Assembly: GCA_965202585.1 (NCBI GenBank)
Contig: OZ241834.1
Span: forward strand, 37,262,001-37,326,000
DNA: 64,000 nt
From: Thalia democratica
Lineage: Eukaryota
Direction of reading: 5' to 3'
The translations under genes and the position numbers were made by a program. Shown one piece after another: positions 7,301 to 40,900 of the stretch; within the stretch, counting starts at the first letter, position 1, and the number at the start of each line of letters is the position of its first letter. Under the pieces are notes generated by a model. That model did no database searches and was not told where the DNA came from. It saw nothing but the letters and a program-made list of their open reading frames with translations.

Positions 7301-7997
7301 AATCATGTAATATATATCTAATTATTGTAAAGATTATACAGTAAAGTACAATATTGACAATAAACATTATTAAAATTTTAAAAACAGCTTAAGTTTAAAT
7401 TCAATAGTTCAAAATTTAATAACTATAACCATTGAAAATATATGCAAAACATTAAAATACTGTTAAATATATAAGAAAATGTAAATATTGATACATTTTT
7501 GCATGCATAAAGTAAACTTAGACTAGATAATTGAAAATTCTTATGCTAGTGTATACAAATTATATAATTTTAAAATCATACGAAAACAATAAACATTAAA
7601 ATAAATAAAACCTTTACTTAGTGTACTCATAAAATTGCTTTACATTATATAAACAAGAGCTTTTAAATTTCATACAAAATAGCAAGTAATAAAATATAAG
7701 ACAGATTATCAAAAAAGATATCAATTTATTTTCATGTTTATCGGAACTACTCAAGCGTTAATTTTGCGTCAGTGTGTAAAATCTAAAGTTAATGAAAACG
7801 AGTGTATTGTTTTTTGAAGATTAAGTACAAACTTATATATCGTAATATTAATTGCTATGTTATGCAATTACATAAAAATACACTAAATAACCAAATTTAC
7901 ACAAATGCTTAAAACGTACATTTAAAAAAAAAGCATTGAAAAAACCATGTTAATAATTCAATTTTATTGTTTCAGAATTTTATTTTGAGAATATATA

Positions 7998-8372
7998 ATG
8001 CCACTCAGTCAAGCTATCACGTCACAACAAGGAATTCTAATATTTACAAATCTGATTGCATTGTTAACTTTGTCTTATTTGAGTAACGCGCATCAAGTTT
8101 TGTTCGAATATTGCATCGGAGTTATAAAACAACACGCCGAAACTGAGAGCAGGATAGAAAAATACCAGTGTATCTGTTTACAAGTGTTTATCTTCCTTTT
8201 AATTCTTAAGTCGTTCGAAATCTTATTCCGAGGAGTGATTAGATTCCTGTTTACTTTCTGGGAGAAAAAAGGGGATCGTCTGAAGTTCACAGCAGTCATG
8301 ACGTTTCCCGCTACATTCTACGTTGCTTTTCATTCCTTCGAATATTGTTTGAACAATTACATTGAAAAATAA
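7998..8372 (+). CDS. Small hydrophobic protein, 124 aa, ~3 TM-like segments (cluster ORF1)
   Basis: Intronless ORF, GC-elevated, tttcag acceptor 22 nt before the ATG, AATAAA just after the stop. Confidence 0.65.
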   Translation: MPLSQAITSQQGILIFTNLIALLTLSYLSNAHQVLFEYCIGVIKQHAETESRIEKYQCICLQVFIFLLILKSFEILFRGVIRFLFTFWEKKGDRLKFTAVMTFPATFYVAFHSFEYCLNNYIEK

Positions 8373-8712
8373 ATGACAATAAATAAAAAACAATTTAATT
8401 TTATAAATAGTTTAAATATTTTTACAGCTTACAAGTTGTATTTTATTAGTAAACGTATTGAAATTATTTATTTTAATTATAATTACTTTTGTTTCTACTA
8501 TTTAAAATTTAAATTGATTATAATTAGTCAAGCGCTAACTTTACTTTGATGACGTAATAAATCACTTTGCTTAAGAATTTAATGTAAGTTGTATTTGCTT
8601 CTAAAATAAAGTGTGTTTATGACAATATAAAAGTAAATAAATTATTAACAAAGTAGAAATTGTTAGCACACCAATTGAATTGATTTTTTCAGAACTTTTT
8701 ATAAGTATAACA

Positions 8713-9045
8713 ATGGATCTAAACAAACTTCTGAAAGCTTTGCAGCTGCGCCTTGCTTTGATGATCACGGCGGTGGCCATCATGAAGATCACCCAAGCGG
8801 ACGCGGATAAGTTTGGAGAGTTGGTGATTGGCGTTGCTGACTACGTAGAGCACCCGAACTTAAGACTAGCCTACCTATACGGGCTGGTGATCGTTGCGGT
8901 GCTGTCTGCTAAGTGGCTGGCGAAGTGCTTATTGGAGTTCCACAGCCAGTATTGGACGCGCATGTATGTAGAACTGAAGTTGATCGCAGTACTGCACACC
9001 ATTTGTGAACTGCTCATCCTGCAATATTACGTTAACGGACATTAA
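8713..9045 (+). CDS. Small hydrophobic protein, 110 aa, 2-3 TM-like segments (cluster ORF2; ATG at 8713)
   Basis: GC-elevated ORF, ttttcag acceptor 20 nt before the ATG; motif KITQADADKF shared with ORF3/4. Confidence 0.7.
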   Translation: MDLNKLLKALQLRLALMITAVAIMKITQADADKFGELVIGVADYVEHPNLRLAYLYGLVIVAVLSAKWLAKCLLEFHSQYWTRMYVELKLIAVLHTICELLILQYYVNGH

Positions 9046-9235
9046 AATTATTATTTTTATTAAAATGTGTTAGGATTGCAAATTATTAAATAATTTGTTT
9101 GTAATAAAGCTTTTTTAGTTTTATTATTTTTACAGTGTAACTTTTATTAATGTATTAGAACTTTTTATACTAGATAAAATGTAAATACTAACAATATATT
9201 TACTCAACTTTTTAGGACTTACTATAATCACTACA

Positions 9236-9487
9236 ATGGCTTTTGACATGAGATCAGCTTTGATTTTGGCAATAGGCATGTTCCTTCGGGTCAACCAAAT
9301 TGACGGGGAGAAGTTTCAGGAGATTCTGAGAAAATACGGAGATGAAATTGAAAGCCCGGCCGGAAAAGCAGTCTTCCACTTCTGTTTAGTTGCTTTTCCC
9401 ATCTGGCTTTCCTACAAGCTGGTCAAAGCGATGATCACGCTTTTTCGCAACGGAGTTCGGGTAGGCCTCATCGTGCCTGTTGAATAA
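9236..9487 (+). CDS. Small 2-TM protein, 83 aa (cluster ORF3)
   Basis: GC-elevated ORF; tactaac branch site plus ttttag acceptor 20 nt before the ATG; motif RVNQIDGEKF. Confidence 0.7.
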   Translation: MAFDMRSALILAIGMFLRVNQIDGEKFQEILRKYGDEIESPAGKAVFHFCLVAFPIWLSYKLVKAMITLFRNGVRVGLIVPVE

Positions 9488-9860
9488 ACAATGCATAGAA
9501 CTTTAGTACTTTGTATTTGACTTTTAAGTTGTTTAGTATAACGTTAAAATATTTTTATTGAGACGTTTTGTTTATTGAGTTGTAAAGTTGCTTTTTATAA
9601 AGTTTTAAGTTATTTTATAATTTATAATCAACATTAGAGTACTGACAATAACATATCTTTAAACACACATGTCATTATGTATTATTTAATTTGTATATAA
9701 CTTAAACAGACAGTTTATAAAACTTTATTTTACTCGTAAGACTAACAACTTTTGTTATTTTACATACATGTTTTGAAAATTAATTTAAATCAAGTACTTG
9801 GTATATGCTAACAAAAATTAATACTTAAATCATTTTAGGACTTACTATAAAAATATTACA

Positions 9861-10148
9861 ATGATTTTTAAGAACCTCTGTTTTCTATTAGCATTGGTTT
9901 TCCTAATGAGCTGCAACCAAAAGGACGCGGAGAGACTCGAGAGAGTTTACAACACTTGGGAAAACGAAGTAGAAGATCGGAATCAGCGCGTAGCCTCCTT
10001 TTCTAGCTTCTACGTGCTTCTACTTTTCGCGTATGCAACAGTGTGGGTCATTGTGAGGAGTTTGATTGTCTGGTTACATACCGAGGCCAGTGAGGAATTT
10101 GTTGCAGATGCACCTGTAGAAGAAGAACAGTTTATAGTAGAACAATAA
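9861..10148 (+). CDS. Small 2-TM protein with acidic tail, 95 aa (cluster ORF4)
   Basis: GC-elevated ORF; tgctaac plus ttttag acceptor 22 nt before the ATG; motif SCNQKDAERL; leader shared with ORF3. Confidence 0.7.
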   Translation: MIFKNLCFLLALVFLMSCNQKDAERLERVYNTWENEVEDRNQRVASFSSFYVLLLFAYATVWVIVRSLIVWLHTEASEEFVADAPVEEEQFIVEQ

Positions 10149-12450
10149 CTATGTTTATTGTGAACACGTTTTGTTTACTAACTGTATAAAAAGTGTTTTT
10201 TTTAAAGCTGTATATAATTTTAAACTTGAGTAACTTTTTAAACTTTAATACTAACAATATCTTTTTTTATAACATATACTTATTTTTTGCTTTATTTGTA
10301 TATAGCTATAAACAGTCAGTATATAGAACTTTATCTTACTCATATTAACAACTTTAGTTATTTACAGCAGCTATTTATAGTAAAATATGCAATATTTTTT
10401 TTTCCTTGTCAATCTATGGTTGATGGGTAGAATTTTCAGGTAAATTTAATTGTAAATAGAATAATTTTTCAAGGTCCTTTTAAAGACCACCCATTAAAAT
10501 ACTAAACATTAAATAAAAACTTTAAAATTATTATTTAAAAACAACCGTGGCTTTTGTTTTTAACAAAAAAGTTTTTTTTTGTTTTTTTGTAAGCTACAAA
10601 ATGGGAATAGTGGTTGTTATAAGAATTAACTTTTACTTCTCTTTTTTAAATAAAATTTCTTATTTTTTTTAACAAATGAATGAAAAACAATACAGTAAAT
10701 ACAAAACAACAAAAATTAAACAAAAAAAAAGTTATTCTTATGACTTTTTTCCCACCTTTACTGGGTTTTGATTTCATTTGTTTTTTTTAAATACTTGATG
10801 TACAAGAGAAGAAAAGTTATATCTTATAACCATAAACCACAAATAATAATTACTATAAGATTTTATTTAATTAAAAACTTTAATCATTTCGTAAACAAAA
10901 AAAAAATTATCACGTAGGTCATATTTAAAATAAACAAGTAATTATAACGTGTTAAGCTTTTTAAAAAACCAAAACGTGGAAGATGAAACAAACGATTTGC
11001 GAGCTATTGTGACGTCATAATTCAGCATCTGAAGATATGTGAGTTTAAAATTGCATGAAGGTAATTCGTTTAAAAGACTGGTCTTTTTAAGAAGGTCTTT
11101 GTAACAAGTTTTAGGACAACTTAAATATTAAGTTGTTAAAAAAACAATAATAACTCTTGAAACGATAAACAGTAAAAATTATTTAACCTACAAATTTTCT
11201 AAATGACTTGAGTAAATTGTGTTCATCATTTAAAAGCTTTTGTGACGTTTTTCAAACTGCATTGTTTTTCAAAATAAACATAATTATGATTAAAATTTAA
11301 TTGCTAATTAGCTTTTAATTTATACATAACTTGTTACAATAAGTCATTGCAAAACATAACTTTGGTAGGAGTCTTTTATTATTATTTTTAAAAGTTTTGA
11401 TTTCTGATACTGCCTTTTAAAGCTAAAACTTATTTTTACTTGTTGCAATTCAAAACTGTTTAGGACTTTAATTTCTTTAATTAGCTTAAGTTTAGCTAAA
11501 CAATTAAAGACTATTAAGTTAGTTTACAAAGTTAAAGCATGGCATTAGAAAATAAATAACTTATTGTAATTATGACTGGTAATTGGTTTGTTGAAAGCGC
11601 AAATTTTTAGTAATTAAACGTTTGTCTATCACAGATAATTCAAGAAATAAAACATTTAGAGTTTATCAAACATCAGAAATATAAATAAATTTCTGTCATT
11701 TTAAACAAAAGCCTAAGAAAAATATAATTAAGATTTAAGTCATTATAACTATAAACGTTATTTTGATGCTATTTAAAATTTTCATTCAGTATTCCTAACA
11801 CAAACAGACAAACTTAAATTAATTAATCAGTTTAGGGTTCGAAAAACAAAATTTGATAAAGCAATTCAACATGTGAAACCACAAAACGGAGTGACGTAAT
11901 AATGGACTGATATGACGGTATGACGCAACTAGCCTGCTTAGCAACATGAGTGATGGTGAAAACTCAAAAAAAGCAAATATACATTGAAGAGTTTTGTGAA
12001 AAGTTTTTATATTCTATTAAGACATTTGTTATGTAAATAACTTTAGTAATTAGTGTTTCCTTTGCCATGAGAACCTAAAAGCTTGATAAACTATATAACT
12101 TTAGTAAAATTATGGCTTAATATTACAGCTAATATATGGATAAACTTTCTAAGCTATTTTCTAAAATTTTGTCAGTTGATCAAATCAAGGAAAAACTTTA
12201 TATTTTAAGTAACATAAGTTATTTTATTTAATATTCTTATTAATGAATTCTAAAACTTATAACACTCTAGTTACTTTCCAAAAGATGTACCCAAGAAGCC
12301 TAATACATACATTTCAAACAGTGTTTGTTTTTTATTTATAAGAACTCAATTAAAAAGACACTTAGTATCCATTAAATTTTAAACTTAATGAATTAAAAAT
12401 AAATTACCAAACTGTATTAAAATTTTTTTGACTTTATGTTTGGTCTAAAC

Positions 12451-12751
12451 CAGGGGTTGGCAGCCTTTTTTTACTTATAGGCCAAATTTTTTATTAAAAT
12501 TGCTCAAAGCTGCAATATATAAAAAATTCTCGAGGGCCTCAGATGTTTAAAAATAATTGACCTATAGAAAAATACTATTCTAAAACAAAAATATAGTTAA
12601 TAAGCAGTAGTAAAAATTATTTACTAGAGCCTAATTGTAAGTTTTTATTACAAAGTCTTTTATTTTTAAAGTTAAAAAAAAAGATAGTTTTTAGCTAATA
12701 AGTACCTCGCGGGCCACAGACTTTGACTTTGAGGACCACAGTCTACCCTTG
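12451..12751. mobile_element. hAT-type MITE
   Basis: Starts caggggttggcag, ends ctacccttg; imperfect 8-bp TSD gtctaaac / gtttaaaa; subterminal cgcgggccac. Related ends occur at ~4780 and ~35886. Confidence 0.6.
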
Positions 12752-15700
12752 GTTTAAAATCAACATCAGTTTGTGTTGGTTATTTGTTGGTCCAAAACAA
12801 AGTCATTTTGATACTGTCATAGATCTGAAATGTAAGTATTCAATAAAATTTAGTGCCAGTTTATAAGCACTATACTGAATTATTTGAAATAACCTAATGA
12901 CCATCTTGAAAGCAATTTCAAATACTGCTTAATCCTTTAGTATAAAATATGTTAGAAGTTAAAAAAACTTCTGTGCAAAGTTTTTCTTTTAATTATAATA
13001 AATTATACTGAAAACTAGTTCGTAAGTTATTAAAGAATTAATAAGAGTTGAAAGTTGTTACTTTACAAACTTTAGTTATGTAAAAACTATGACTTAACAC
13101 TTTTATCTTTCAATTAAGTTATCATAGCACACAACTTTAAAGTATAAACAATTTTTAAGTTTTGTACAATACAAAAAAATTAAAGTTAACTAAAGAAATT
13201 AAAAAACATGAATGGAAACATGTTTCCTTTTTTAGATTGACAGCAAATTTTATTAACTTTACAGTAAACACTTTTTTGTAAATATAAAAAGAACAATTTT
13301 CCAATCAAATAAAACTTTGCCTTTTTAAACAGTATGTTGTTTACTCTTTTATAAACTTTAAAATTTATACTTTTATCTGTTTTTAGTTATGTTTCAAATA
13401 TTCTTATAAAGCTTAAAATAATAATTACCAATAAATTTTGTAAAAAATACAATAAAATTTATAATAACATAAAGCTCTGAAAAGTTTTTAAAGTTAACAG
13501 TACTTATATTAAACTAATATTAAATTGAAATATGCTTTAGAAAGTTGTTGTATCTTTTGTGAATAAGTTATAGTTTCTATTCTAAAGAAACTACAATTTG
13601 AACAATTGAATTTATTTAAAGAGCTTTACTTTTTGTAATTATTTAGTTGATAAGTAAACCTTTAATAGCATATGCAAAAAGTCTATTGTTAAATAAACAA
13701 CAGGGTTGCCAAAGGTTTTTTAACAAAATTTCAAGGTTTTTTGAATTTCTTATATGTTTTTAAAGAATAAGTATTCTGATCTATTTTTAGTAAAGAAGCT
13801 GATTTAAATAGTAAAAATACATTGGAAAGATGCTTAAAGCTACTTTAAATGTGTTTAAAAACATGTTTTTAAAATGATACAAATAAAATTTTATCTTTAT
13901 GACATGTTTTTTGTGTTTATCAGAATTTCTTTACATGTAAATCTAGTTTAAAATTTAAGCTGTTTTAGTGATTTTGTTCAAAATTCCAGGTTTTTGAAAA
14001 AACAAAAATAGTCGAACCTGGTTGCTATAGATTCAAAAACTAATTGTATGATTGACAGTAAAAATAATAATGTTGTTTATAAAAAAACTAGTAAATGTTT
14101 ATATTTAATAGTTACATCTAAAGATTAAGTGTGTGTAATTTGTTTGCAAAAATGATTTGTATTGTTAACTTTACATATTAAAAAAAAAATCATCAGTTTA
14201 ATGAAGATGTGAACTGCAGCAGTTAATCCAATAAATTAAATTAAACTAAACAATATTTTATATTCAATGTATAGATATTTCTCATTTTATTATGTAGTTA
14301 CAAAGAAATTATTATTTTTATTATCAATACTACAGTTAACTTGAATTTTTTTGAATATCAAGTTTTAAAGAACTTAAAATGCTCATAACTATTATTTTAT
14401 ATATAATTATTAAATAACTACTTAAATAATAGGTATTTTATAATTACTGGTTTATTTTTGAGTAAGCTACCTTAGTATTAAACTTATGATATTAACTTTA
14501 AGCTTATCTTTAAAAGCTTTGAGTTTTATTTTGAAAAGTTGTCAACATTTTATAAAAGTACAATTATAATTACACATTTTATAAATCTAAATGGATAGAT
14601 TTGTTCTCAGAGTTTTTTTAATTCTAATCATTTCATAAGCGCATGAAACACAAAGTTAAGTAATAAACCCTGAGTTTAAAATTGTCTCACTAATGTTTGT
14701 TCTTGCTCCTTTTTAGTAGAGCTTTTTCCTGGGGAAATAATAACCTATCAAGCTATAGCTATTAGATTTGTTCCTACATGTATTAAGCTTTAATTGTAAA
14801 GAAAATAATTACCTGTGTAAGTATGGATAGATATGTTTTCTTTAATGTAGTTTGGAATAAACACAAGCTCCATTGCTATCAGCCTCCAAATTCTAATTTC
14901 CTTCACTTTTTATACTGGTGAGACAAAAAGAATATAATCATTTTAGAATTGTTCTATATTCTCTGAACATAATCATTGAATTAGAATTAAATTATTGATC
15001 AATTTTATGTAGAAGTATTTTAAAAGATTTATCAATTTATTTAGCTTTATAAAAACTATCAATCTTAACAATTTAGATTACATTCTAGACAGCTTTGAAT
15101 GCATAACAATTGAAAAATAAATTTTATTTAATAACTAGTTCAGTATAGAGTTAAGTATAGAGATATAAAGAAAGACAACGTTGTTACTTAAAATACCTTC
15201 AATATATAACTCATATATACTTTTAAGCTGAGTAAAAGTTTGAACATAAACATTCATTAAGAGAGTAACTTCCCAACAATAATAACTCAACAGTAAACTG
15301 CAAAATAAAATTTATTCATTTAATTATTTACAGACTTCTACTTGTATTAACACAAGTCAAACACATAAACCTACTTTTAAAAGTTAATCATATAAAGAAG
15401 TATGTATAAAAACCTTAATATCTGTTTGTAGGTATAGATACCAAATGGAAAAGTCACAACAAAGTTTAAAAATAAATAAATAACTTGAATTTAAGATCAC
15501 CAGTAAACAATATTTTTAAACTTTTTTACTTATAATGATTTTATACTTTTCTGAGCTAATAATAAACCTATATGTTCATCAAAGGAAAGCTACTTAAGAA
15601 TGTTTATTGCCCTAAGTTTAGTACTTTATTAAGTGTATCAATCACTAATAAAAAACTATATTAAGTTCTCTATTGACTTGTACTAGTTATACTTTATCCT

Positions 15701-19689: not shown

Positions 19690-20477
19690 TAGTCGAGAAT
19701 CAAATAAGACCCTTTCGAGAACTACTGTGCCTCTTAAGTTTAGGACCTTCCGTTTTAGCCTAAATGCAAAATAAAACGCTTCTCTACAAGCTTAAGATTT
19801 CATTTTTTAATGATATGCGTACTTTTAGTCTGCGCCCTTTTTTAACGACCACCCTTGCCATCCCACCCAATTGCGTGATTTTCAAGCACTACAGCTTGAA
19901 TAAACAGTTTTGGAGTTAGTGCGGCTTTTAACACCAGACTTAGTCTTCAACGGATACTTTTTAAAAAGTTTAAATTTAGACATACCAATTGTAGAACTTC
20001 GCACGAGAGCAACTTTTATTTATCGTCATTACCTCCCGAGCCGGAAATGGGTAACTTACGGGCCTGATACCTTCCTTAGACATGGTAGCCGTTTCTAAGG
20101 CTCCCTCTCAGGGATCGAACTCTAATTCTTTATCAACCGTTACAATCTCTGTAGGTACTGAAAATAGTTTATACAGCAGTTACTTTAATGACATGTCGCC
20201 AGTACTAGGCTGTGCGATCCACAAGCTTATCCAGATTCTCCATTGTAACGACCCTTTTAGTTTTGGTCTGATAAATGCGCGCCTCATGTCAGTTCGGCGC
20301 TTTACGCATGTATTAACTCTAGAATTGCCACATTTACCAAGTAAAACTGTAAAATCAAATGAACCATAACTGATTTAGTAAGTCATTCGCAGTTTCACTG
20401 TATGTGAGCTCGTAGTTACACTTGCATGGCTTAATCTTTGAGACAAGCATATGACTACTGGCAGGATCAACCAGATA
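19690..20477 (-). pseudogene. 18S rRNA 5' fragment (pseudogene)
   Basis: The minus strand begins TATCTGGTTGATCCTGCCAGTAGTCATATGCTTGTCTCAAAGATTAAGCCATGC. It continues through GAGAGGGAGCCTTAGAAACGGCTACCA and a damaged GTGCCAGCAGCCGCGG motif (GTGTTAAAAGCCGCAC), then ends after the V4 region. Confidence 0.92.
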
Positions 20478-28913: not shown

Positions 28914-28985
28914 GGGGATATAGCTCAGTGGTAGAGCAATCGTCTGCAGATCGATAGGTCCTTGGTTCAAATCCGAGTGTCCCCT
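28914..28985 (+). tRNA. tRNA-Cys (GCA)
   Basis: GGGGATATAGCTCAGTGGTAGAGC...CTGCAGA...GGTTCAAATCCGAGTGTCCCCT; acceptor and T stems pair; T-run terminator at ~28989; one T-T mismatch in the anticodon stem. Confidence 0.9.
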
Positions 28986-37900: not shown

Positions 37901-40900
37901 ATTTAATTAATGCATAATAGTTTACATTCTCTGAGTTAAAGTTCACAAAATTTAAACTCCAACATTAAAAATAGTTTGTTAAATATATATTTTAATAATT
38001 TTTTAAAAATATTTTTCTGACCTTAACTTTTGTTTATTAAAGATCTGCTAAGTTTTTTGATTGAAAAAAATTCAAATAAGTTATTGAAATATTGCCTTAC
38101 GAAAATCTAATAAGAGTTTGAACTGTTGTAAGTTAAACTGTCTTGTAACTCTATGATACAGTTATTAAGTATTTTTTAATTAAGTTTTATATTTTTTAGA
38201 TGAATTACATGCAGAAGTAATTTATGCCGAACTGAATTTATTCTACGCAATGCTCACTTTTATACAGGTTGTTTAGATTATAATTAAAAAGTTTGTAAAA
38301 ATAATAATTTTATAAAATTGTTTAAGTTACAGTTGTTATTTTAAAGCAGAAGTCAATTAAGTATGTTACGCCTTCGTAATTTTGTTTCAAAATTATATTG
38401 TACACTGTTTTTTAATATTTTACATTACTAGTTTAAAAAACAGTAATTTAGTGCTACTGATTGTAAAAACAATTCAATCAAATAGAAATTTACCACTTTA
38501 ATGCATCTATAATTTAAAACTGCTATTATAAGATGTATTTAAAATAATTTTATAAATGTAAAAAATTAAATAAAAAGCTTAACAAAAAAAGGTACAAAGT
38601 CTACATAATGATAGGTTAATTTTTTAAAAAATAATTTATATTTTTTTTATAGGACGAAAGCGTGATGAATCTTGTAAAAGGAGCGTTGAAGATGAAACAA
38701 GGTTACAACAGCTACAAGAAATGCGAATGTTTGGACCAAGACATGACAAACATGTGTAATAACAAGCACTTCCAAGGAGCCATAAACCTCGGCTGTGGTT
38801 GTTTTAACATTGTTAGTTGTTTTGTTAGTTGAACACAAAGTTGATTAATTAAAGACATTTGTTAAACCAAAACTTTAACAATTGTCTTTAAAAGAACCTA
38901 CAAACATTTTCAAATATTGTTACCTATTGGCTAGGGCTGTTTAAACATTGTTACTTGTTTTAATAATCATAATTAGAAAAAAATAACAAAAAACCAAAAC
39001 TGAAACGTTTATTAAGACTTTGTTTTAATAATTACCTGGAAAATAACTTACAAGTATCTAGCCAATAAAACTTTTAAATGGTTTTTTAAAGTTTACTTTT
39101 TTTAGTGTGAATAAAAAAAAAATTGTCAGAGTATTTCTTAAAAAGAAGTAAAAAAATGTATATTTTCTTTTTGTATGCTAACTATGTAAATGTTTTCTGA
39201 TAAGACAAACCTAATGTTTAAAAAAAAGATTTGGTGAAATTTATTTTAATCTAATTGTCTGCACCCAGTTATTTTCAGTTATACATTCTTGGTTAATATT
39301 TTTTCTTTATATTTGAATAAAAATTGCTATAAACAAGTACATGAATATTTGTTCTATAGGGCATGTAATTTTTACATTATAAAGCAAGGTTCCCTAAAGT
39401 GAACCATTTTGCCACCTTGGGGGCAATTATAGAATTTTAGGGGGCCATAAGCAGCAAAGGGGCTAAAGAGGGGGGCATGAGCAGTAAAGGGGCCCCATGG
39501 GGGCTATGAGGCCATAATTTGAAACTCATACTAGATATTCTGGAGTTGATGGTGAAGAGCAGATAAAAAATAAGGTCCTAGGTATATTTAGGGGACACTA
39601 AATATTGTGGGAAGTCATAAGGTGTAAAAGAGGGAGTCATAAGGCCATAATTTTAAACTTACACCAGATATTCTGAAGTTGACGGTTAAGGGGAAAAAAT
39701 TAAGTGAATTTAGGGGAATTTTTTTGAGAGATATTGTTGGAGGGGGCCATTGCTATTTTTATTTCTTTAAAAGGAGGCTTTAAAAAATAATCTTAGGGAA
39801 ATCCTGTTAAAAAGTCATATCAATAATAAAATTTATATTAAACTTATAATAAAGATAATAAGTAATTTATCTTTTAGGGAATGTCATTACTACCAGCCAG
39901 AGTAGTGGCAATACTGAAGTGGATAGGCTTCGATAGCGACAAGAAAATAGGATTACAACAATTAAGCGATTGTTACCTGAACTCAAACGTGAGGAGTTCG
40001 CTTTCTTCACTGTTCGTACTTGGCTATCACCTGTTCATATGTTCGTTTGTCGGTTAGTTGATGTTGATATTTGTATACTTTTATTTTATTGTCTTCGTTG
40101 TTCGTACTTGGGTGTCACCTTTTCATGGGAACGGGTCACTATTGCACGAGGGGACACTTTTGCACGAAGGGTCACTTTTGCACGAAGGGTCACTTTTGCA
40201 CGAGGGGACACTTTTGCACGAGGGGACACTTTTGCACGAGGGGACACTTTTCACGGCAACCTTTTTCACGCAGGGTCACTTTTGCACGAAGGGTCACTAT
40301 TGCACGAGGGGACACTTTTGCACGAGGGGACACTTTTCACGGCAACCTTTTTCACGCAGGGTCACTTTTGCATAAAGAATGGACTTAAAAAGGTACGCTC
40401 CAACGTTAGTTACGCGTAAAGTACGCACTAAATCTCGAAATAAACAAAATAGAAAGTTTTATGAAGTACTTGACGCGGATACGTACTTGAGGGAGGTGCG
40501 TACCTCTTAAAGTGCTTTCTACAAAAGTGACGCCGTGCACAAGTGACCTTGTGTGCAAAAATGTCCCCTCTTGCCAAAGTGATGCTCGTGTAAAATAGAC
40601 ACCTACCCAGTTGTGGACTCAAAGACTGAAAAAATAATATAATTTTCCAGGAACAGCGGAACTAGAATGCGACGTTGAACTTTGCACGTCGATAGTTGAC
40701 AAAATGCTGAACAAATACCCGAACGGAATTTATTTTCATTTCTTTGCCGGCAGAATTCAACAATTTGTTGGTGATTTCGACAAGGTAAGAATTGAGTGGT
40801 GAAATCTAAAATAAAACATTAAAACTTGTATTCAGCAATTTGTTATAGATTTTGACAAGGCTAGAGAGTTAATTAGAAAAATAAAAAACACCTTATACAG

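What the first reader, a model, noticed from the sequence alone, without database searches (positions are those of the whole stretch)
7998..10148. Tandem cluster of four intronless small membrane-protein ORFs, apparently an orphan family
Four co-oriented, GC-elevated ORFs (124, 110, 83, 95 aa) lie within 2.2 kb. ORF2-4 share an architecture: hydrophobic segment, then [NT]Q-x-D-[AG]-[DE]-[KR]-[FL] (KITQADADKF, RVNQIDGEKF, SCNQKDAERL), then a charged amphipathic loop, then a second hydrophobic segment. ORF1 has a similar hydropathy pattern without the motif. No family is recognised. A rapidly diverging tandem micro-membrane-protein family could act in gamete recognition, allorecognition or host defence; that function is speculation.
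Basis: partly seen in the sequence, partly recalled or inferred. Interest (0 to 1): 0.7.

Follow-up and report, generated by a model that had tools for sequence, protein, structure and literature searches.

The report
Orphan tunicate micro-membrane gene cluster
Four short GC-rich genes for tiny helical membrane proteins sit side by side in a planktonic tunicate genome; at least three are kept under selection in a sister lineage, they have no detectable relatives anywhere else, a spliced RNA from the opposite strand overlaps them, and their function is unknown.

Summary
Four co-oriented ORFs (124, 110, 83 and 95 aa) fill GC-rich islands (37-54% GC) in roughly 20% GC DNA.

ORF1-3 are real coding sequences. 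Against two environmental contigs from a sister lineage, the + frames give dN/dS of about 0.3 (P = 5e-7). No stops have arisen, and the start and stop codons of ORF2 and ORF3 are kept.

ORF2, ORF3 and ORF4 are paralogues (alignment z-scores 10.4, 5.6 and 3.2). ORF1 resembles them only in hydropathy.

No family was found by Pfam, PDB, the word search, an exhaustive HMM search of 1.84 billion proteins, or the animal's own 800-Mb genome. Only the sister-lineage orthologues turned up.

Two things are new:
- Each ATG lies 20-22 nt behind a TTTYAG acceptor, so "intronless" applies only to the CDS. The leader is probably spliced on.
- The one RNA-like contig (L014) is spliced at GT..AG sites of the opposite strand. 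It is an antisense, non-coding RNA whose exons cover ORF1-3.

Sense transcripts were not seen, and no RNA run holds the stretch. ORF4 has no orthologue, and its two haplotypes differ at four residues with no silent change.

Function is unknown. The recognition or defence idea is untested.

The parts
7998..8372 (+). ORF1, 124 aa. Three hydrophobic helices. Shares no significant sequence similarity with ORF2-3.
   Evidence: Orthologue P0002 on L014 is 84% identical. dN/dS is 0.32, P 0.0018. Hydropathy. No match to the ORF2-4 profile.
8713..9045 (+). ORF2, 110 aa, the family member with the highest GC (0.51; GC3 0.65). The loop between helices 2 and 3 is hypervariable among lineages.
   Evidence: A full-length 110-aa orthologue lies on the contiguous (genomic) contig L018, with the same start and stop. 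dN/dS is 0.30 (P 0.00085).
9236..9487 (+). ORF3, 83 aa, family member.
   Evidence: A full-length 83-aa orthologue P0003 lies on L018. dN/dS is 0.26-0.35. Similarity to ORF2 gives z = 10.4.
9861..10148 (+). ORF4, 95 aa, family member with an acidic C-terminal tail. No orthologue was found. A second haplotype differs by E27N, N31S, A84V and V93E.
   Evidence: Searches found no orthologue. One search shows the X2 contig with 5 substitutions; one search shows all are non-synonymous. Similarity to ORF3 gives z = 5.6.
7970..7975 (+). TTTCAG 3' splice acceptor, 22 nt before the ORF1 ATG.
   Evidence: It is kept in L014.
8687..8692 (+). TTTCAG acceptor, 20 nt before the ORF2 ATG.
   Evidence: L018 has TTTTAG at the same place.
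9210..9215 (+). TTTTAG acceptor, 20 nt before the ORF3 ATG. A TACTAAC branch-point-like box lies at 9186-9192.
   Evidence: Both are identical in L018.
9833..9838 (+). TTTTAG acceptor, 22 nt before the ORF4 ATG. A GCTAAC box lies at 9807-9812.
9651..9765 (+). Distal 3'-flank element of unit 3. It recurs after ORF4 at about 10255-10370 with 79% identity and marks the tandem duplication of roughly 605-625 bp.
11424..11468 (+). Remnant carrying the same flank motif plus TTTAGGACTT but no ORF. Possibly a decayed further unit.
   Evidence: repeat families D2 and D8; searches show no ORF.
7894..8350 (-). Antisense RNA, last exon seen. It covers ORF1 and 104 nt upstream of it. Its end is set by the end of the contig.
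   Evidence: L014 1-455 aligns at 90%. The acceptor at the orthologous position is not AG in the window.
8729..9018 (-). Antisense RNA exon covering ORF2 codons 7-102.
   Evidence: L014 457-741.
9019..9222 (-). Antisense intron, GTAAGTCCT...ATATTGCAG on the minus strand. It is present in the window and in L018 and absent from L014.
9223..9476 (-). Antisense RNA exon covering ORF3 codons 1-80 and 13 nt of its leader.
   Evidence: L014 742-995.
9477..12705 (-). Antisense intron, GTACTTATT...TTCAACAG. It contains ORF4.
12706..12824 (-). Antisense RNA exon in non-coding DNA.
   Evidence: L014 about 996-1108 at 86%. The match is unique in the genome.
12825..14812 (-). Antisense intron, GTAATTATT...CATTTCAG.
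14813..14948 (-). Antisense RNA, first exon seen. The contig ends here.
   Evidence: L014 1109-1242 at 87%. The match is unique in the genome.

Best explanation
The locus is a lineage-restricted cluster of four small protein-coding genes in a planktonic tunicate. ORF2, ORF3 and ORF4 are paralogues made by tandem duplication of a unit of about 0.6 kb. ORF1 is a neighbour with the same hydropathy plan but no demonstrable sequence kinship. Each encodes an all-helical micro-membrane protein with four parts: an N-terminal hydrophobic signal or anchor helix, a charged amphipathic loop of about 25 residues (opening with [NT]Q-x-D-x-[DE]-[KR]-[FL] in ORF2-4), a second transmembrane helix, and a short tail or third helix. 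I infer that they insert co-translationally into secretory-pathway membranes. There they would sit as helical hairpins, or as single-pass type I proteins if the first helix is cleaved, and act as small accessory or regulatory membrane subunits. This step is inferred, not shown. The coding sequences are uninterrupted, but every ATG lies 20-22 nt behind a TTTYAG acceptor. The mRNA 5' ends are therefore most likely made by splicing, probably by addition of the tunicate spliced leader at unpaired acceptors. With 170-350 nt from each stop codon to the next acceptor, this is not a Ciona-type spacer-free operon. In the sister lineage, the opposite strand is also transcribed into a spliced, non-coding RNA whose exons coincide with ORF1, ORF2 and ORF3. 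The cluster therefore lies under a natural antisense transcript, which may modulate its expression; that too is inferred.
For: Coding: in the comparison of window and L014, substitutions fall 30/16/44 on codon positions 1/2/3 of the + frames (P 0.0015). dN/dS is 0.31 overall (0.32, 0.29 and 0.35 per ORF) with no stop, while the five other frames carry 12-35 stops. Fisher's test gives P = 5e-7 overall and 0.0018, 0.00068 and 0.011 per ORF. A permutation matched for base and substitution type gives 40 synonymous changes observed against 25.2 +/- 4.1 expected (P 0.001), and 0 stop-creating changes against 3.15 expected. The only indel inside an ORF is 3 nt. GC2 is about 0.3 and GC1 and GC3 about 0.4-0.65 in all four ORFs. 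The contiguous (genomic) sister contig L018 keeps ORF2 at 110 aa and ORF3 at 83 aa, with the same start and stop codons.
Family: Smith-Waterman z-scores against shuffles are 10.4 (ORF2-3), 5.6 (ORF3-4) and 3.2 (ORF2-4). Units 3 and 4 align through their flanks.
Orphan status: no Pfam hit. The word search of 5.8 billion proteins returned only the L014 orthologues. The exhaustive hmmsearch of 1.84 billion representatives returned only P0001 and P0003. The animal's own genome holds only the three members, and each ORF is single-copy. Nothing was found in PDB or the Atlas.
Acceptors: TTTYAG ends 22, 20, 20 and 22 nt before the four ATGs. The chance is about 0.5% per ATG. The acceptors are conserved in L014 and L018. 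SL trans-splicing at unpaired acceptors is established for tunicates (PMC1488885).
Antisense RNA: L014 is colinear with the window in five blocks. Three of the four junctions fit CT..AC exactly on the + strand, which is GTAAGT..CAG, GTACTT..CAG and GTAATT..CAG on the minus strand. L018, which is 98.4% identical to L014 across ORF3, still holds the 204-nt segment that L014 lacks. The minus frames are closed.
Helical: the AF2 model has four helices, and hydropathy agrees.
Against: No sense-strand transcript was seen. The only RNA-like sequence is antisense and truncates the ORFs. No public RNA run holds 5% or more of the stretch's words, although other agents' notes report RNA data for this genome elsewhere. 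The ORF2-ORF3 spacer is only 7% diverged, less than dS (0.24-0.30). Part of the high dS may therefore reflect faster mutation of G/C at GC-rich third positions; the base-matched permutation answers this only partly. ORF4 has no orthologue on record, and its two haplotypes differ by five substitutions, all non-synonymous, which fits relaxed constraint as well as diversifying selection. The shared motif is altered in the ORF3 orthologue. The structure model has low confidence (pLDDT 56). That L014 comes from a metatranscriptome rests on its internal splice evidence and on my memory of the JGI sample series, not on a record I could read.
Confidence: 0.7

Rival explanations
1. The functional product is the minus-strand spliced long non-coding RNA. 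On this reading the GC-rich blocks are its exons, and the + strand ORFs are decaying or former genes that are no longer translated.
For: The only RNA evidence (L014) is minus-strand and spliced, and its exons match the GC-rich blocks. No RNA run holds the sense sequence. The spacers and splice sites are well conserved (7% divergence). ORF4's allelic differences are all non-synonymous.
Against: RNA-level selection cannot produce substitutions distributed by codon position (30/16/44) or dN/dS of 0.3 in exactly the + frame in three separate ORFs. Start codons, stop codons and lengths are kept in L018. Acceptors at a fixed 20-22 nt before each + ATG make sense only for + strand mRNAs. The antisense exons also include plain AT-rich non-coding DNA (12706-12824, 14813-14948).
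Confidence: 0.12
2. The four genes form one SL-resolved operon. A single + strand polycistronic precursor starts upstream of ORF1 and is cut into four mRNAs by trans-splicing at the four acceptors. This is a variant of the best explanation that differs only in the transcription unit.
For: The genes are co-oriented and tightly spaced. An unpaired-looking acceptor sits just before each ATG. AATAAA lies at or near each stop codon. Operons and the Ciona-type leader are reported for this genome by other agents (not checked here) and for Ciona (PMC1488885).
Against: Ciona operons characteristically lack intercistronic DNA. Here 170-350 nt lie between a stop codon and the next acceptor. No polycistronic or SL-bearing read was available. 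AATAAA is common by chance in DNA of about 20% GC.
Confidence: 0.25
3. The four ORFs are exons of one larger + strand gene.
For: The reading frames stay open from the acceptor into each ORF (one search reports open frames of 100-134 aa).
Against: Each block starts with its own ATG and hydrophobic N-terminus and ends in a stop codon that is conserved in L018. No plausible GT donor precedes the stops. The same architecture repeats in each block.
Confidence: 0.03
4. The cluster is foreign or mobile DNA: a viral, transposon or horizontally acquired cassette. That would explain GC-rich genes with uninterrupted CDSs in AT-rich DNA.
For: The GC contrast with the surroundings, the uninterrupted CDSs and the shared orientation.
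Against: Each ORF is single-copy in 800 Mb. No viral, transposon or bacterial relative appears in Pfam or in 1.84 billion proteins. ORF1-ORF2-ORF3 are colinear with L014, and the ORF2-ORF3 segment is contiguous on L018, at about 10% divergence. The genes carry animal-type acceptors and branch points.
Confidence: 0.03

Closest known systems
Taxonomically restricted (orphan) tandem gene clusters for small single- or double-pass membrane proteins, such as the metazoan SMIM-type micro-membrane proteins and the phospholamban/sarcolipin-type regulators
   Same: The size (83-124 aa), the all-helical hydrophobic architecture, the short charged loop, the tandem duplication and the narrow phyletic range.
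   Different: There is no sequence or profile similarity to any described family. No partner, location or phenotype is known. The comparison concerns the kind of protein, not membership.
SL trans-spliced genes and operons of tunicates (Ciona intestinalis; PMC1488885)
   Same: Co-oriented neighbours, each with a TTTYAG acceptor close to its ATG and a very short leader.
   Different: Ciona operons have no intercistronic DNA. Here the spacers are 170-350 nt, and neither the leader nor a polycistronic RNA could be observed.
Cis-natural antisense transcripts (spliced antisense lncRNAs overlapping coding genes)
   Same: A spliced, non-coding RNA is read from the opposite strand, with canonical GT-AG introns, and overlaps the coding sequences.
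   Different: One antisense RNA spans three separate small genes and uses each CDS almost exactly as an exon. It was seen only in a sister lineage and only as one environmental contig.

Membership tests
Any described protein family (Pfam, PDB, large protein collections) | Significant sequence or profile match | tested here: not met
   The best Pfam hits have E 0.013-0.22, all below the curated cut-offs. The best PDB hits have E 0.36-0.66. The hmmsearch of 1.84 billion representatives returned only the two sister-lineage orthologues. The Atlas feature scores are 0.87 or lower.
ORF2-4 paralogue family (defined here) | Pairwise similarity above composition-matched shuffles | tested here: met
   z = 10.4, 5.6 and 3.2 for ORF2-3, ORF3-4 and ORF2-4. 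The DNA flanks of units 3 and 4 align.
ORF2-4 paralogue family (defined here) | ORF1 is a member | tested here: not met
   ORF1-2 gives z = 0.9, ORF1-3 gives z = 0.4, and only ORF1-4 reaches z = 3.4. The family profile does not rank ORF1 above 2000 of its own shuffles.
Protein-coding gene under selection | dN/dS below 1 in the proposed frame only, with the frame kept in a relative | tested here: met
   Met for ORF1-3. It could not be tested for ORF4, which has no orthologue.
Protein-coding gene under selection | Sense-strand transcription and translation | not testable with these tools
   No RNA run holds the stretch. The only RNA-like contig is antisense.
Ciona-type SL-resolved operon | Cistrons directly abutting, with no intercistronic DNA | tested here: not met
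   320, 170 and 350 nt lie between each stop codon and the next acceptor. The criterion comes from PMC1488885.
Ciona-type SL-resolved operon | Downstream mRNAs carry the spliced leader, and a polycistronic precursor exists | not testable with these tools
   No RNA reads were available for this stretch.
Cis-natural antisense transcript | RNA from the opposite strand overlapping the genes, with its strand fixed by splice-site orientation | tested here: met
   Three of the four L014 junctions are GT..AG on the minus strand. The removed segment is present in the sister lineage's contiguous contig L018. This was shown for the sister lineage, not for the window's own animal.
Secretory-pathway membrane protein with an N-terminal signal | N-terminal hydrophobic h-region followed by a further TM helix | tested here: met
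   Kyte-Doolittle segments.
Secretory-pathway membrane protein with an N-terminal signal | Signal-peptidase cleavage site with small residues at -1 and -3 | tested here: inconclusive
   By eye, there is no consistent -3/-1 site before the NQ motif. No predictor was available.
Transposon or virus gene | Multiple copies, terminal repeats or homology to mobile-element or viral proteins | tested here: not met
   Single-copy in the genome. No such homologues were found. The viral-contig scan with the four-ORF alignment could not be run.

The most novel reading that the evidence does not exclude
The ORF2-4 family would be a fast-diversifying, polymorphic surface or recognition system. The supporting observations are that ORF4's haplotypes differ at four residues with no silent change, that ORF2's second loop is rewritten among three lineages, and that the paralogue CDSs are more diverged than their flanks. 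On this reading, paralogue expression is governed by a single spliced antisense RNA that uses each coding sequence as an exon. That would be a sense/antisense switch over a micro-gene array.
Probability: 0.08. Interest if true: 0.7.

Novelty: new member of a known kind. Interest (0 to 1): 0.4.

Why it matters
The locus adds a verified, selection-supported orphan family of micro-membrane proteins to a poorly annotated animal group. Such genes are routinely missed by gene finders because they are short, have no homologues and have uninterrupted CDSs. It is also a clean example of a single spliced antisense RNA whose exons mirror three separate small coding genes. That arrangement warns that a spliced transcript over an ORF does not give the ORF's strand. 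If the family proved to be polymorphic and recognition-related it would matter more, but nothing here shows that.

Tried and rejected
- A further downstream unit. I first suspected a fifth gene copy, but only a 45-nt remnant with no ORF lies at 11424-11468.
- L014 as a + strand mRNA or as a genomic deletion variant. Rejected because the junctions are CT..AC on the + strand, they truncate the ORFs, and L018 keeps the spacer.
- U12-type AT-AC introns on the + strand. Rejected because the removed segments start with CT, not AT.
- The minus strand as coding. Rejected because its frames carry 12-20 stops.
- Searches for more relatives or transcripts. Two metagenome-contig scans, with ORF4 and ORF3, found nothing and did not even return L014. 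A paper search for the JGI sample id found nothing.
- The Atlas look-alikes scored too low to use. Rfam found nothing on L014 or L018.
- The AF2 model has pLDDT 56, too low for a fold search, so none was run.
- Read laying gave only DNA contigs of one sample. They confirm the sequence and reveal a second ORF4 haplotype but say nothing about expression.
Full report
**1. The observation.**

- ORF1, 7998-8372, 124 aa
- ORF2, 8713-9045, 110 aa
- ORF3, 9236-9487, 83 aa
- ORF4, 9861-10148, 95 aa

The window averages about 23% GC. The ORFs form sharp islands of 37-54% GC separated by spacers of 13-25% GC. Only eight ORFs of 90 aa or more exist in the 64 kb, and three of them are here. The quoted motifs and the hydropathy plan are real. 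The window has no N. DNA contigs from the source sample reproduce 7600-10555 without a difference.

**2. Are they genes?**

Each ORF is single-copy in the 800-Mb genome, so the cluster is not a repeat.

The word search found a 78%-identical protein on the 1251-nt environmental contig L014. The exhaustive search found an 83-aa protein on the 861-nt contig L018.

L018 is contiguous with window 8687-9541 at 88.6% identity. It carries a full 110-aa ORF2, a 196-nt spacer and a full 83-aa ORF3, with the same start and stop codons as in the window.

Between the window and L014, substitutions fall 30/16/44 on codon positions 1/2/3 of the + frames. The selection results are:

| Comparison (window vs L014 unless stated) | dN/dS | Fisher P |
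|---|---|---|
| ORF1-3 combined (dS 0.245, dN 0.077) | 0.31 | 5e-7 |
| ORF1 | 0.32 | 0.0018 |
| ORF2 | 0.29 | 0.00068 |
| ORF3 | 0.35 | 0.011 |
| ORF2, window vs L018 | 0.30 | 0.00085 |
| ORF3, window vs L018 | 0.26 | 0.0016 |

The + frames carry no stop, while every other frame carries 12-35 stops.

G/C sites in an AT-rich genome may mutate faster, so I re-dealt each observed substitution among positions holding the same base. That gave 25.2 +/- 4.1 synonymous changes expected against 40 observed (P 0.001), and 3.15 stop-creating changes expected against none observed.

ORF1, ORF2 and ORF3 are therefore coding and under moderate purifying selection. ORF4 could not be tested this way, because no orthologue was found. 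It does share the GC1/GC2/GC3 periodicity of the others.

**3. Is it a family, and is it an orphan?**

Local alignment scores against composition-matched shuffles:

| Pair | z | P |
|---|---|---|
| ORF2-ORF3 | 10.4 | <0.001 (0 of 1000 shuffles) |
| ORF3-ORF4 | 5.6 | 0.002 |
| ORF2-ORF4 | 3.2 | 0.011 |
| ORF1-ORF4 | 3.4 | 0.010 |
| ORF1-ORF2 | 0.9 | not significant |
| ORF1-ORF3 | 0.4 | not significant |

A profile of ORF2-4 plus their orthologues does not rank ORF1 above its own shuffles. ORF2-4 are paralogues. ORF1 shares only the architecture.

Units 3 and 4 also align through their non-coding flanks. Nucleotide identity is 63% in the 5' flank, 46% in the CDS, 61% in the proximal 3' flank and 79% in the distal 3' flank. 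The array therefore grew by tandem duplication of a unit of about 0.6 kb, and the coding parts have diverged more than the flanks. A 45-nt remnant of the flank motif without an ORF lies at 11424-11468.

No relative was found outside the sister lineage:
- Pfam gave nothing above the cut-offs.
- The word search of 5.8 billion proteins returned only the L014 proteins.
- The exhaustive hmmsearch of 1.84 billion representatives returned only P0001 and P0003.
- The profile finds only the three members in the animal's own genome.
- PDB and the ESM Atlas gave nothing.

The orphan claim stands as far as these tools reach. Remote homologues of proteins of about 100 aa made largely of TM helices could still escape.

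**4. Gene anatomy on the + strand.**

Every ATG is preceded by a TTTYAG whose AG ends 22, 20, 20 and 22 nt upstream. No ATG lies in between. ORF3 has a TACTAAC branch-point-like box and ORF4 a GCTAAC box.

TTTYAG occurs 1.7-1.9 times per kb per strand. The chance of this spacing is about 0.5% per ATG, and only 3.3% of all ATGs in the window have such a site 15-25 nt upstream. The acceptors are kept in L014 and L018.

"Intronless" therefore applies only to the CDS, and the leader is spliced on. In tunicates, about half of all genes receive a spliced leader at unpaired acceptors (PMC1488885). Other agents' notes say this genome uses the Ciona-type 16-nt leader (I did not test this).

The spacers of 170-350 nt do not fit the Ciona operon type, which lacks intercistronic DNA. 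Whether there is one precursor or four promoters is open.

**5. The unexpected part: an antisense spliced RNA.**

L014 aligns with the window in five colinear blocks:
- 7894-8344
- 8731-9018
- 9222-9478
- 12702-12839
- 14813-14948

It skips 386, 203, 3223 and 1973 nt between them. On the + strand, three of the four junctions fit segments that begin with CT and end with AC. On the minus strand these are canonical introns:
- GTAAGTCCT...ATATTGCAG
- GTACTTATT...TTCAACAG
- GTAATTATT...CATTTCAG

The fourth junction has a usable minus-strand GT donor in the window, but no AG at the orthologous acceptor.

L018 is 98.4% identical to L014 across ORF3 and still contains the 204-nt segment with those same boundaries. 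L014 is therefore a processed RNA, not a deletion allele. Its two distal blocks are unique in the genome, which argues against a repeat-driven misassembly.

Read as + strand RNA, the junctions would cut off the ends of the ORFs. Read as minus-strand RNA, the molecule has no open frame and no Rfam match. So in the sister lineage a spliced, apparently non-coding antisense RNA runs across the cluster, uses ORF1, ORF2 and ORF3 as exons, and skips ORF4.

The conserved GGACTTAC in front of ORF3 and ORF4 serves two roles. It is the first bases of the + strand leader, and on the other strand it is a consensus donor, GTAAGTCC.

I believe the JGI sample (3300019144) is a marine eukaryotic metatranscriptome and PRJEB4352 is Tara Oceans DNA. 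That is from memory; a paper search for the sample id found nothing.

**6. What is missing.**

No sense-strand transcript was seen. No public RNA run holds a twentieth of the stretch's words. Only two DNA data sets from one sample do, and laying them confirmed the sequence.

Those data sets also showed a second haplotype over 9764-10259 with five substitutions in ORF4. All five are non-synonymous: E27N, N31S, A84V and V93E. The number is too small to separate relaxed constraint from diversifying selection.

The ORF2-ORF3 spacer is only 7% diverged, less than dS. Either it is constrained, since it holds the splice signals of both strands, or AT-rich DNA simply mutates more slowly here.

The shared motif is partly lost in the ORF3 orthologue (NQID becomes NRIT). 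ORF2's loop between helices 2 and 3 differs among all three lineages, including a 3-nt indel.

**7. Mechanism.**

Shown:
- Coding constraint on ORF1-3.
- Paralogy of ORF2-4.
- The helical, hydrophobic architecture. The AF2 model has four helices but pLDDT of only 56, so I ran no fold search.
- Conserved + strand acceptors.
- Antisense splicing in a relative.

Inferred:
- The proteins enter secretory-pathway membranes through the N-terminal hydrophobic helix. They would sit there as hairpins, or as type I single-pass proteins if that helix is cleaved. No consistent cleavage site is evident.
- They act as small accessory membrane subunits.
- The mRNAs are trans-spliced.
- The antisense RNA modulates the cluster.

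**8. Surroundings.**

The cluster lies in gene-poor, AT-rich DNA. The next recognisable features are:
- an SSU-rRNA-like fragment at 19808-20477 on the minus strand, and a tRNA at 28914-28985;
- what looks like the start of a TTC39-like + strand gene from about 35.5 kb (the name comes from another agent's note).

None of these is evidently connected with the cluster.

**9. Verdict.**

This is a real, conserved and genuinely orphan micro-membrane-protein gene cluster, three of whose four members are paralogues. It has a spliced-on leader and an overlapping spliced antisense RNA. In kind, it is an ordinary taxonomically restricted gene family. The antisense arrangement and the ORF4 polymorphism are the only features that might repay experiments.

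Noticed in passing
window 19808-20477 (-): Rfam SSU_rRNA_eukarya matches at 299.6 bits, with the whole 1831-position model squeezed into 670 nt. It is a fragmentary or heavily deleted small-subunit rRNA-like sequence inside a GC-rich block of about 1 kb (19.6-20.7 kb). That block also explains the 95-aa and 97-aa ORFs found there.
   Followed up: no
window 28914-28985 (+): A tRNA gene (Rfam, 67 bits) stands alone in AT-rich DNA.
   Followed up: no
window 11424-11468: A copy of the unit-3/unit-4 flank motif (TAAAACTT.TTTTTACT.GT) is followed by TTTAGGACTT, but no ORF follows. It may be the remnant of a lost further gene unit.
   Followed up: partly
window 11885-11935 and 11005-11015, 8551-8558: There are several TGACGT(A/C) CRE-like motifs. 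One dense group sits in a small GC-rich block at 11872-11963, downstream of the cluster. It could be a promoter or enhancer, and its strand and target are unknown.
   Followed up: no
window 12440-12760: A pair of imperfect inverted ends (TAAACCAGGGGTTGGCAG... / ...CTACCCTTGGTTTAAA) suggests a MITE-like element. Its right part is used as an exon by the antisense RNA. The repeat finder did not report the pair at seed 8. The L014 stretch that matches the right part had only one match in the genome search.
   Followed up: partly
window 8935-8975 (ORF2 codons ~75-88); L014 and L018: The loop between helices 2 and 3 of ORF2 reads EFHSQYWTRMYVELK in the window, EFNNVYWRGMNVEQK in L018 and EY-SEYWTRMHVEQK in L014. 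ORF2 differs by 7.3% between L014 and L018, whereas ORF3 differs by only 1.6%. This is a local hot spot of protein change.
   Followed up: partly
window 9764-10259: This is the only part of 7600-10600 where the two DNA data sets of the source sample assembled different haplotypes, with 5 substitutions and 1 inserted T. All five substitutions fall in ORF4 and all change the protein.
   Followed up: yes
window 40084-40410 (+): A GC-rich block is open in several frames and reads as short tandem repeats (…RGDTFA…, …RGHFCT…). It is a simple coding-like repeat at the edge of the region that other notes assign to the TTC39B-like gene.
   Followed up: no
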